DNA of 64,000 nt from positions 434,001 to 498,000 of the forward strand of contig NIVC01000163.1 in the NCBI GenBank assembly GCA_002269645.1. Direction: 5' to 3'. The notes beneath the pieces were generated by a model. It worked only from the letters and a program-made list of their open reading frames with translations, ran no database searches and was not told the origin of the DNA. Position numbers and translations under genes: made by a program. This DNA comes from Macrostomum lignano. Its lineage: Eukaryota. Below, in pieces: positions 42,570 to 50,984 of this stretch. Within the stretch, counting starts at the first letter, position 1. The number at the start of each line of letters is the position of its first letter.

Positions 42570-50984
<8,415 letters not shown>

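What the first reader, a model, noticed from the sequence alone, without database searches (positions are those of the whole stretch)
50158..50178. WS/DGAT-fold protein lacking the catalytic histidine: candidate metazoan pseudo-acyltransferase
Seen: the motif position reads [10 protein letters not shown]. Established: WS/DGAT enzymes (Acinetobacter AtfA HHAMVDG, plant WSD HHSLGDG) use HHxxxDG, where the second His is the catalytic base. Here HACFGDG aligns with His2 replaced by Ala, while flanking structural motifs are retained. Inference: a catalytically dead or mechanistically altered member, perhaps a lipid sensor or scaffold, of a poorly characterised invertebrate subfamily. The most interesting protein-level signal in the window.
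Basis: partly seen in the sequence, partly recalled or inferred. Interest (0 to 1): 0.7.

Follow-up and report, generated by a model that had tools for sequence, protein, structure and literature searches.

The report
Flatworm WS/DGAT-like gene lacking catalytic histidine
The motif is real and lies in a three-exon flatworm gene of an old, unstudied animal branch of the wax-ester/triacylglycerol synthase family, in which nearly every member, not just this gene, has lost the histidine that normally does the chemistry, so the usual database label "diacylglycerol acyltransferase" is doubtful.

Summary
Window 50178..50158 on the minus strand encodes H-A-C-F-G-D-G within ...[20 protein letters not shown].

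It belongs to a three-exon minus-strand gene of about 845 codons (50984..42570). The gene sits between a phospholipase D gene and a GPCR gene, in Macrostomum lignano or a very close relative.

The protein is a WS/DGAT-fold protein. Pfam WS_DGAT_cat scores above its threshold, a profile built only from bacterial HHxxxDG enzymes gives E=7e-35, and the AlphaFold model's best solved matches are the WS/DGAT structures 6CHJ and 7NXG.

The profile alignment across the motif has no gaps. The retained His is His1, and the canonical catalytic His2 is Ala.

This is not a lesion private to this gene. The long animal-type homologues recovered (named ones come from flatworm, molluscs, brachiopod, priapulid, arthropods, echinoderm and hemichordate) form one clade with R-x-H-[P/Q/M/L/A/S]-x3-D-G.

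The window's paralogue is more degenerate than the rest of the clade: ND is QD, LPGP and PVDLR are lost, and there is no Pfam C-domain hit.

This copy also carries a 1-nt frameshift at 50404/50403. A 97%-identical copy in UniProt does not have it.

Function is untested. I favour a non-canonical, probably non-catalytic, membrane-anchored lipid/acyl-CoA-binding protein.

The parts
50158..50178 (-). Active-site-loop motif H-A-C-F-G-D-G. The His corresponds to His1 of HHxxxDG and the Ala occupies the His2 position.
   Evidence: Translation. Ungapped alignment to a bacterial HHxxxDG profile with top posterior probability. In the AF2 model the strand ends at this His and a helix starts at the Gly.
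49738..50984 (-). Coding exon 1. The ATG is at 50984 (context GCCATGG) with in-frame stops upstream. It encodes an acidic N-terminus, the [11 protein letters not shown] motif, a Cys-rich hydrophobic anchor and the WS_DGAT_cat domain, and ends ...RRAQQ followed by the donor GTGAGC.
50403..50405 (-). 1-nt frameshift. The codon CC- is broken between 50404 and 50403 (CGA CTG CC^GAC GGC). The 97%-identical copy P0171 reads ...[18 protein letters not shown] straight through.
50640..50780 (-). Hydrophobic membrane-anchor segment with a Cys cluster ([45 protein letters not shown]; residues about 69-115).
   Evidence: The 19-residue Kyte-Doolittle mean is at least 1.6 over window centres 78-110, peaking at 2.47. 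A hydrophobic and Cys-rich N-terminal region is also present in other clade members.
49006..49737 (-). Intron 1 (GT..AG, 732 nt), almost entirely a (CTGT)n microsatellite. It has no stop codons, which produces the spurious 1041-aa ORF.
48253..49005 (-). Coding exon 2 (VTQSSDQD...IARCLRNQ, donor GTGAGT). It holds a degenerate C-terminal lobe with an insertion of about 100 aa.
48982..48987 (-). Q-D at the position of the family's N-D motif; the Asn is lost.
43107..48252 (-). Intron 2 (5146 nt, GT..AG). It contains minisatellites of 13-14 bp units (47168-48242, 45720-46391, 43170-44259) and 11 bp units (44771-45238).
42570..43106 (-). Coding exon 3 ([13 protein letters not shown] ... [18 protein letters not shown] ... 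DFDDPELDR ... EAEECEV, then the stop). It is collinear with the C-terminus of the M. lignano paralogue P0001.

Best explanation
SHOWN: the motif is the active-site loop of a three-exon gene of Macrostomum lignano (or a very close relative). The gene encodes a divergent paralogue of a bilaterian-wide clade of long, N-terminally membrane-anchored WS/DGAT-fold proteins. Across that clade His1, Asp and Gly of HHxxxDG are essentially invariant, while the canonical general-base position His2 is a variable non-His residue (P, Q, M, L, A or S). The Ala here is therefore the clade's normal state. INFERRED: the classical mechanism, in which His2 deprotonates the acceptor hydroxyl for attack on the acyl-CoA thioester, is not available. 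The residues that are kept (His1, Asp, Gly, P-x-W) are the ones regarded as structural in this superfamily, so the selected property is more likely the fold and its hydrophobic or acyl-binding tunnel than canonical catalysis. In the window's paralogue several further pocket-associated motifs have decayed (ND to QD, LPGP to ATVG, PVDLR to ITDCAE), and the C-lobe carries an insertion of about 100 aa. The membrane anchor, the EGxxPRLW motif, the C-terminal coiled-coil-like segment and the tail are kept. I therefore commit to this reading: the gene encodes a non-catalytic, or at most weakly and non-canonically catalytic, membrane-anchored lipid/acyl-CoA-binding or scaffolding protein. The copy in this window may additionally be disabled by a 1-nt frameshift.
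For: - Family and fold: Pfam PF03007 scores above its threshold. WIN, the conceptual protein from this window, gives E=7e-35 against a bacterial HH-only profile. The AF2 core is confident (pTM 0.74) and its best PDB matches are 6CHJ and 7NXG.
- Motif alignment: it is ungapped in WIN and in all 56 non-HH hits, with top posterior probability.
- Column statistics over 59 non-HHxxxDG sequences: His1 59/59, Asp 100%, Gly 89%. The His2 position is P25, Q19, M5, L3, H3, A1, S1, R1.
- Tree: the long animal-type proteins form one NJ clade, with WIN sister to P0001.
- Taxa: flatworm, molluscs, brachiopod, priapulid, chelicerates, millipede, crustaceans, hexapods, echinoderm, hemichordate.
- Extra degeneration specific to WIN.
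- Conserved splice junctions and collinearity with the 40%-identical paralogue P0001 through to the C-terminal tail.
- The motif is identical in the 97%-identical copy P0171.
- Literature: His2 is 'strictly conserved' in active WS/DGATs, whereas His1 can be Ser or Asp in active enzymes (PMC5513132). [quoted passage not shown]
Against: - No activity, binding, expression or localisation data exist.
- The clade as a whole still keeps ND (88% and 81%), LPGP (about 80%) and a conserved Arg. That would be expected if substrate binding, and perhaps catalysis, persists.
- Stoveken et al. 2009 report in their title that both His are essential in AtfA (known here only from the reference lists seen), so His1 could have a chemical role.
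- Clade-specific invariant acidic residues (E in NTEG, D after the motif helix) could supply a substitute base.
- I could not inspect model coordinates to see which side chains line the tunnel.
- The degeneration in WIN could simply reflect a dying gene copy.
Confidence: 0.5

Rival explanations
1. Mechanistically altered but active acyltransferase. The clade still makes esters (WS, DGAT or another O- or N-acylation). It would use the retained His1 after a local re-registering of the loop, or a relocated base such as the clade-invariant Glu of NTEG or the Asp after the motif helix, in the way NRPS Cy domains moved their catalytic residues.
For: The single His, Asp and Gly have been strictly conserved over more than 500 My of bilaterian divergence, and ND, LPGP and an Arg are retained in most clade members. 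All 9 tested clade members match both Pfam WS/DGAT domains strongly. One millipede member still has HH. Bacterial-type lineages with H-P/E/L/Q at the same spot are maintained in metagenomes, for example the 9-member P0071 cluster. Condensation-superfamily domains with other motifs are among the structural neighbours (Cy domains).
Against: The His2 position is variable (P, Q, M, L, A, S), so nothing at that position replaces the base. His1, Asp and Gly are explained by structural roles alone. The window's protein has lost ND, LPGP and PVDLR and has no detectable Pfam C-domain, which is hard to reconcile with an intact active site in this paralogue.
Confidence: 0.3
2. The copy in this window is a recently inactivated pseudogene, one homeologue or allele of a duplicated flatworm locus. 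On this reading the motif here has no function, whatever the clade does.
For: There is a 1-nt deletion at 50404/50403 relative to P0171, giving a stop 31 codons downstream (TGA at 50312..50310). About 840 PLD codons in the same window show no frameshift against the same reference protein, so indel errors are not frequent in this assembly stretch. M. lignano carries several copies of such loci (three Mlig032752 copies).
Against: It is a single lesion. All other exons are open, the splice sites are canonical, and the protein is 97% identical to the intact copy, with divergence similar to that of the neighbouring PLD. One indel in about 5 kb of coding sequence is also compatible with an assembly error. 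No reads are available to decide.
Confidence: 0.2
3. Alignment artefact. On this reading the retained His is really the catalytic His2, a one-residue insertion lies between it and DG, and the mechanism is ordinary.
For: Q-H-A could be laid over H-H-A, because Ala is common right after HH in bacterial enzymes.
Against: A profile built from HH enzymes alone aligns all 56 non-HH hits and WIN without any gap between the preceding strand and the following helix, with maximal posterior probability. The flanks match residue for residue (R-x-H-H-C-x-x-D-G-x-S-L against R-x-H-P-C-x-x-D-G-x-S-L). In the AF2 model the strand ends at the His and the helix starts at the Gly, the canonical spacing.
Confidence: 0.05

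Closest known systems
Bacterial and plant WS/DGAT enzymes (Acinetobacter AtfA/AbWSD1, PDB 7NXG; Marinobacter WS/DGAT, PDB 6CHJ; Arabidopsis WSD1; mycobacterial Tgs)
   Same: Same two-lobed fold; these are the best Foldseek hits. The Pfam catalytic-domain match and the E=7e-35 match to a bacterial profile agree. The P-x-W motif, His1, Asp and Gly of the motif loop, and the strand-loop-helix geometry are shared.
   Different: His2 is absent. ND is QD and the LPGP motif is absent. There is no Pfam WS_DGAT_C hit and the C-lobe has an insertion of about 100 aa. The protein adds an N-terminal anchor with a Cys cluster and a C-terminal extension of about 170 aa.
Bilaterian 'putative diacylglycerol O-acyltransferase tgs1 / MT1468 / Mb3761c'-like proteins. 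These names are automatic. Examples: Macrostomum lignano PAA81538.1, Ptychodera XP_070580235.1, Patiria XP_038048978.1, Tachypleus XP_076350395.1, Lingula XP_013388081.1.
   Same: The single-His motif R-x-H-[not H]-x3-D-G, the AP...HP N-terminal motif, the hydrophobic and Cys-rich anchor, EGxxPRLW, and the C-terminal L..EF...ELRRR segment. WIN groups inside this clade as sister to the M. lignano paralogue.
   Different: The window protein is among the most divergent full-length members: it matches 29 of 43 clade-conserved columns. It lacks VTR, ND, PVDLR, LPGP and RRIPGE.
Thraustochytrium TrWSD4 and TrWSD5 (PMC5513132)
   Same: Eukaryotic WS/DGAT homologues with a non-canonical HHxxxDG motif.
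   Different: This is the converse case. There His1 is Ser or Asp, His2 is kept, and the purified enzymes are active. Here His1 is kept and His2 is lost.
Condensation-superfamily domains with replaced motifs (NRPS heterocyclisation domains with DxxxxD; non-catalytic C-like recruitment domains)
   Same: Same superfamily fold; Cy domains are among the structural neighbours. They are precedents showing that the fold survives loss of the His and is reused for other chemistry or for binding (my own knowledge of the field, not tested here).
   Different: There is no sequence-level relationship beyond the fold, and these are modules of bacterial megasynthases, not membrane-anchored animal proteins.

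Membership tests
WS/DGAT (Pfam PF03007 + PF06974) | N-terminal catalytic-domain profile match above the curated threshold | tested here: met
   PF03007 scores 28.4 bits against a cut-off of 23.6, E=1.7e-6. The bacterial-only profile gives 107 bits for the best domain, covering profile positions 6-335.
WS/DGAT (Pfam PF03007 + PF06974) | C-terminal WS_DGAT_C domain | tested here: inconclusive
   There is no PF06974 hit at E<=1 or at E<=0.1, although 9 of 9 other clade members hit it at 41-115 bits. The custom profile gives only 9.2 bits over positions 380-447. The AF2 model nevertheless shows a confident C-terminal sheet and helix, with 10-residue-block mean pLDDT of 72-90 over residues 471-540.
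WS/DGAT (Pfam PF03007 + PF06974) | CAT/condensation-type two-lobed fold, closest to solved WS/DGATs | tested here: met
   Foldseek top hits are 6CHJ_A (E=1.5e-15) and 7NXG (E=6.3e-14), followed by NRPS C and Cy domains. Model pTM is 0.74.
WS/DGAT (Pfam PF03007 + PF06974) | HHxxxDG motif with the second (general-base) His | tested here: not met
   The sequence is H-A-C-F-G-D-G, with Ala at the His2 column in an ungapped, high-posterior alignment.
WS/DGAT (Pfam PF03007 + PF06974) | PLW motif | tested here: inconclusive
   WIN has DRPPWE. The Pro and Trp are kept and Leu is replaced by Pro; the same variant occurs in a few insect members.
WS/DGAT (Pfam PF03007 + PF06974) | ND motif | tested here: not met
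   WIN has Q-D. The Asn is present in 96% of bacterial-type and 88% of animal-type sequences.
WS/DGAT (Pfam PF03007 + PF06974) | Acyl-CoA-dependent wax-ester or TAG synthesis | not testable with these tools
   This needs an enzyme assay or complementation.
Bilaterian single-His WS/DGAT-like clade (unnamed) | R-x-H-[not H]-x3-D-G | tested here: met
   WIN has R-Q-H-A-C-F-G-D-G.
Bilaterian single-His WS/DGAT-like clade (unnamed) | Groups within the clade in a tree of the catalytic core | tested here: met
   In the NJ tree of 99 sequences, WIN plus P0001 sit inside the long animal-type clade, apart from all bacterial-type HH proteins. No bootstrap was run.
Bilaterian single-His WS/DGAT-like clade (unnamed) | N-terminal AP...(I/L)xHP motif, hydrophobic anchor and Cys cluster | tested here: met
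   WIN has [12 protein letters not shown], then a Cys8 run and a hydrophobic stretch of about 33-51 residues. The clade consensus is SAPxxxLxHP...C...C.
Bilaterian single-His WS/DGAT-like clade (unnamed) | Clade motifs EGxxPRLW and the C-terminal L..EF.EL...LRRRK segment | tested here: met
   WIN has AEGGLPRLW and [18 protein letters not shown].
Bilaterian single-His WS/DGAT-like clade (unnamed) | Clade motifs VTRSTxND, PVDLR, (S/N)LPGP and RRIPGE | tested here: not met
   WIN has [18 protein letters not shown] and RRVSAD. The paralogue P0001 keeps most of these motifs.

The most novel reading that the evidence does not exclude
The whole bilaterian clade, not only this flatworm gene, is a WS/DGAT-derived family that gave up the canonical His-base acyl transfer more than 500 My ago. 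It would now work either as a membrane-anchored acyl-CoA or neutral-lipid sensor or scaffold (a true pseudoenzyme family), or with a relocated catalytic residue and a different reaction. In either case the automatic 'diacylglycerol O-acyltransferase tgs1' annotations in invertebrate genomes would be wrong.
Probability: 0.35. Interest if true: 0.7.

Novelty: new variant of a known kind. Interest (0 to 1): 0.5.

Why it matters
Animals are textbook users of DGAT1, DGAT2 and AWAT enzymes, not of the bacterial and plant WS/DGAT family. Yet a conserved WS/DGAT-derived family exists across protostomes and non-vertebrate deuterostomes, and databases name it as a DGAT.

If its members cannot perform the canonical reaction, lipid-pathway reconstructions for invertebrates that rely on those names are wrong. 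That includes ticks, crustaceans used in aquaculture and pest insects. A conserved animal protein family of unknown function would also become open to study.

Macrostomum lignano has two paralogues at different stages of motif decay. It supports RNAi and in situ hybridisation (my own knowledge), so it would be a convenient test system.

For this scan, the result also shows that the UniProt model A0A1I8HWC7 is a chimera of three genes.

Tried and rejected
- The word-indexed protein search with the full conceptual protein and with a low-complexity-free concatenate returned nothing. It missed even the 97%-identical P0171, so the candidate list was probably swamped. The exhaustive representative search and the alignment query were what worked.
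- The PDB sequence search found no significant hit; only the fold search did.
- Exact-product look-ups for P0171 and for two window ORFs found no contig. I therefore could not obtain the DNA of the second copy, compute dN/dS between copies, or identify the assembly.
- I considered a short intron instead of a frameshift at 50404/50403 and rejected it. Homologous coding sequence abuts on both sides with one base missing.
- I rejected the 1041-aa ORF 47071..50196 as a gene. It reads through a (CTGT)n intron and a 14-bp minisatellite.
- I considered the 'His2 plus a one-residue insertion' alignment and rejected it.
- Seven literature searches found no paper on the animal clade. Absence from the held library does not prove absence from the literature. 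Villa et al. 2014 (PMC3911230) is not held.
- Model coordinates are not exposed, so side-chain orientation of the single His could not be checked.

Full report
**Observation.** The window is repeat-rich metazoan DNA, and the finding lies on the minus strand. Translating 50178..50158 gives H-A-C-F-G-D-G, inside ...[52 protein letters not shown].

**Gene model.** The 1041-aa ORF that contains the motif (47071..50196) is an artefact. It runs through a (CTGT)n microsatellite and a 14-bp minisatellite that happen to lack stop codons. Spliced alignment to homologues gives three coding exons:
- Exon 1 is 50984..49738. The ATG sits in GCCATGG, there are in-frame stops upstream, and the donor is GTGAGC.
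- Intron 1 is 49737..49006.
- Exon 2 is 49005..48253, running from VTQSS to CLRNQ with donor GTGAGT.
- Intron 2 is 48252..43107. It is 5.1 kb long and contains four minisatellite arrays.
- Exon 3 is 43106..42570, running from [13 protein letters not shown] to EAEECEV and the stop codon.

Both exon junctions fall at the same alignment positions in the Macrostomum lignano protein P0001, which reads ...RVRQ|VTRTS... and ...CMRAQ|AAALSKLLEHRRV. The conceptual product, called WIN below, has about 845 residues.

**Frameshift.** Exon 1 changes frame between 50404 and 50403. Upstream of that point the homologous frame reads ...[11 protein letters not shown](CC-). Downstream the next frame reads [22 protein letters not shown]. 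The 97%-identical protein P0171 reads ...[20 protein letters not shown] without interruption, so this window lacks one base. No intron can fit there. About 840 PLD codons in the same window show no frameshift against P0171. I cannot tell whether this is an assembly indel or a real lesion in one copy.

**Source organism and neighbours.** P0171 is UniProt A0A1I8HWC7, named 'phospholipase D', from Macrostomum lignano, 2227 aa. It matches the window in this order:
- PLD exons at 62171-63010, 56096-56215 and 53809-55365;
- this gene;
- a rhodopsin-type GPCR at 40347-40649.

The match is at 93-98% identity, all on the minus strand. The window is therefore M. lignano or a very close relative. P0171 is a chimeric model that fuses three genes, and its precomputed Pfam list does not include the WS/DGAT domain. 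P0001 (PAA81538.1, Mlig032752) is only 40% identical to WIN, so it is a paralogue.

**Family and fold.**
- Exon 1 matches Pfam WS_DGAT_cat above the gathering score: 28.4 against 23.6 bits.
- The exhaustive HMMER search found 164 relatives at E<=0.001, the best being P0001 at 6e-28.
- A profile that I built only from 46 bacterial-type HHxxxDG proteins scores WIN at 112 bits, E=7e-35.
- An AlphaFold2 model of the 554-residue core, built with a 26-sequence alignment, has pTM 0.74 and a confident core. A strand ends at the motif His and a helix starts at the motif Gly.
- The model's best solved neighbours are the WS/DGAT structures 6CHJ and 7NXG, followed by NRPS condensation and heterocyclisation domains.

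Membership of the WS/DGAT fold family is therefore solid, even though direct PDB sequence search found nothing.

**Which His is missing.** The HH-only profile aligns WIN and all 56 other non-HH hits with no gap anywhere between the preceding strand and the following helix. For WIN the posterior probability across the motif is maximal. The flanks match residue for residue: bacterial R-x-H-H-C-x-x-D-G-x-x-L against animal R-x-H-P-C-x-x-D-G-x-S-L. The retained His is therefore His1, and the canonical base His2 is Ala here. The alternative reading, His2 kept with a one-residue insertion, is not supported.

**The trait belongs to a clade.**
- Among the 150 best relatives, proteins of about 400-500 aa carry HHxxxDG. 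The long proteins of 550-1350 aa carry H-[P/Q/M/L/A/S]-x3-D-G.
- In an NJ tree of the catalytic core the long proteins form one clade, with WIN sister to P0001 (no bootstrap was run).
- Named members come from a flatworm (Macrostomum), molluscs (Elysia, Haliotis), a brachiopod (Lingula), a priapulid, chelicerates (Limulus, Tachypleus, Rhipicephalus), a millipede (Chamberlinius), crustaceans (Hyalella, Macrobrachium, Palaemon), hexapods (Orchesella, Laodelphax, Ischnura, Neocloeon, Semiaphis), an echinoderm (Patiria) and a hemichordate (Ptychodera). No vertebrate member was among the named hits.
- Over 59 non-HHxxxDG sequences His1 is present in 59 of 59, Asp in 100% and Gly in 89%. The His2 column is P25, Q19, M5, L3, H3, A1, S1, R1.
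- The exceptions are instructive. The millipede protein keeps HH (HHCFSDA), one member has SSCIMDG, and an aphid protein has HRCLADW.
- All nine clade members tested match both Pfam WS/DGAT domains.
- NCBI names several of them 'putative diacylglycerol O-acyltransferase tgs1 / MT1468 / Mb3761c'.
- A few bacterial-type lineages from metagenomes also lack His2 (THPCLVDG, SHEAMIDG and others).

**What the clade keeps and what this gene has lost.** Both bacterial and animal sequences conserve W..F....H, P-L-W, His1, D-G, N-D, G..R, an Arg, (N)xPGP and a Tyr. The animal clade adds RxKxxTR, EGxxPRLW, an N-terminal AP...HP motif, a hydrophobic and Cys-rich anchor, RRIPGE and a C-terminal L..EF.EL...LRRRK segment.

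WIN keeps these features:
- P-P-W;
- His1 and D-G;
- AEGGLPRLW;
- the anchor, with a Kyte-Doolittle peak of 2.47;
- the C-terminal segment;
- a tail shared with P0001 (DFDDPE.DR ... E-x-E-V).

WIN has these changes instead:
- VTQ for VTR;
- Q-D for N-D;
- ITDCAE for PVDLR;
- E-P for G-N;
- ATVG for LPGP;
- RRVSAD for RRIPGE.

WIN also has an insertion of about 100 aa in the C-lobe and no Pfam WS_DGAT_C hit. It matches 29 of 43 clade-conserved columns, near the bottom for full-length members. Its paralogue P0001 keeps most of these motifs.

**Mechanistic reading.**
- Established knowledge: in the CAT / condensation / WS-DGAT superfamily the second His is the general base. Active WS/DGATs tolerate Ser or Asp at His1 but keep His2 (PMC5513132). 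[quoted passage not shown] Stoveken et al. 2009 report in their title that both His are essential in AtfA; I know this only from the reference lists seen.
- Inference for the clade: with His2 replaced by variable residues, the canonical mechanism is not available. What is conserved (His1, Asp, Gly, P-x-W) can be explained by structure alone.
- Inference for this paralogue: the additional decay of pocket-associated motifs, alongside preservation of the anchor, EGxxPRLW and the C-terminal extension, points to selection on something other than acyl transfer. I therefore favour a non-catalytic, or at most weakly and non-canonically catalytic, membrane-anchored lipid/acyl-CoA-binding or scaffolding protein (confidence about 0.5).
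- Main rival (0.3): a still-active enzyme that uses the single His or a relocated base. The retention of ND and LPGP in most clade members supports it.
- Other readings: the window copy may be a fresh pseudogene (0.2; this is not exclusive of the readings above). Misalignment is unlikely (0.05).

**Novelty.** I found no paper on the animal clade in the held library. The only trace was an Anopheles 'DUF1298 domain-containing protein' (AGAP012388) in an expression table. The family fold is known and the sequences are in databases under automatic names. What appears undescribed is the clade-wide single-His motif, so I rate this as a new variant of a known kind, of moderate interest.

**Limits.**
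- No reads, no expression data and no coordinates of the model were available.
- I had no DNA of the second copy, so there is no dN/dS between copies.
- The tree is a quick NJ tree without support values.
- The set of 59 non-HHxxxDG sequences includes a few short fragments.

Noticed in passing
window 40347-63010 (minus strand); protein P0171: UniProt A0A1I8HWC7_9PLAT ('phospholipase D', 2227 aa, Macrostomum lignano) is a chimeric gene model. It fuses three adjacent same-strand genes: PLD, the WS/DGAT-like gene and a rhodopsin-type GPCR. It skips the WS/DGAT-like gene's own start and stop codons.
   Followed up: partly
window 53809-55365, 56096-56215, 62171-63010 (minus): Exons of a phospholipase D gene with an HKD motif (Pfam PLDc and PLDc_2). 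They are 97-98% identical to P0171 and show no frameshift.
   Followed up: partly
window 40044-40775 (minus): An exon of a rhodopsin-family GPCR (Pfam 7tm_1, E=2e-10) lies immediately downstream of the WS/DGAT-like gene.
   Followed up: no
window 26205-37886: An 11.7-kb satellite array of a 236-bp unit (about 50 copies, 97% matches). It explains the flat base composition between 26 and 38 kb.
   Followed up: no
window 16762-20378 and 58092-60015: Further long tandem arrays: a 94-bp unit with 38.5 copies and a 104-bp unit with 18.5 copies.
   Followed up: no
window 3953-23545, 39090-40289, 42348-48242, 49029-49726, 51717-57093, 60612-63625: Micro- and minisatellites with units of 3-67 bp are unusually dense, many of them strand-asymmetric. 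Several fill the introns of the gene studied here and create long spurious ORFs in several frames.
   Followed up: partly
proteins P0071 (9-member cluster), P0146, P0066, P0102, P0127: Bacterial-type WS/DGAT homologues from metagenomes, full-length (470-484 aa) or partial (183-281 aa), also lack His2 (THPCLVDG, SHEAMIDG, THLAMIDG, AHQALVDG, YHPCIGDG). Of the two full-length ones included in the NJ tree (P0071 and P0146), both group with bacterial HH enzymes, so these are independent losses.
   Followed up: partly
protein P0015 (Chamberlinius hualienensis GAB6022741.1); also P0029 and P0101: Exceptions inside the animal clade. A millipede member keeps both His (HHCFSDA), one Logan-derived member has no His at all (SSCIMDG), and an aphid member has HRCLADW.
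   Followed up: no
proteins P0014, P0002, P0022, P0034, P0039, P0037, P0116, P0119: An AT-rich, Lys/Asn-rich subclade with H-M/Q/L/S-C/S-F/I/L-x-D-G. The members looked up come from JGI metagenomes (P0014's cluster lies on contigs of 400-700 kb, P0002 on a 1.4-kb contig) and from Logan assemblies (P0022). They are presumably unidentified small eukaryotes or animals.
   Followed up: no
window 42573-42584 (minus); P0001 C-terminus: Both M. lignano paralogues end in E-x-E-V (EECEV and WEYEV), preceded by the shared DFDDPE.DR. This might be a C-terminal recognition motif, but it is not conserved outside flatworms.
   Followed up: no
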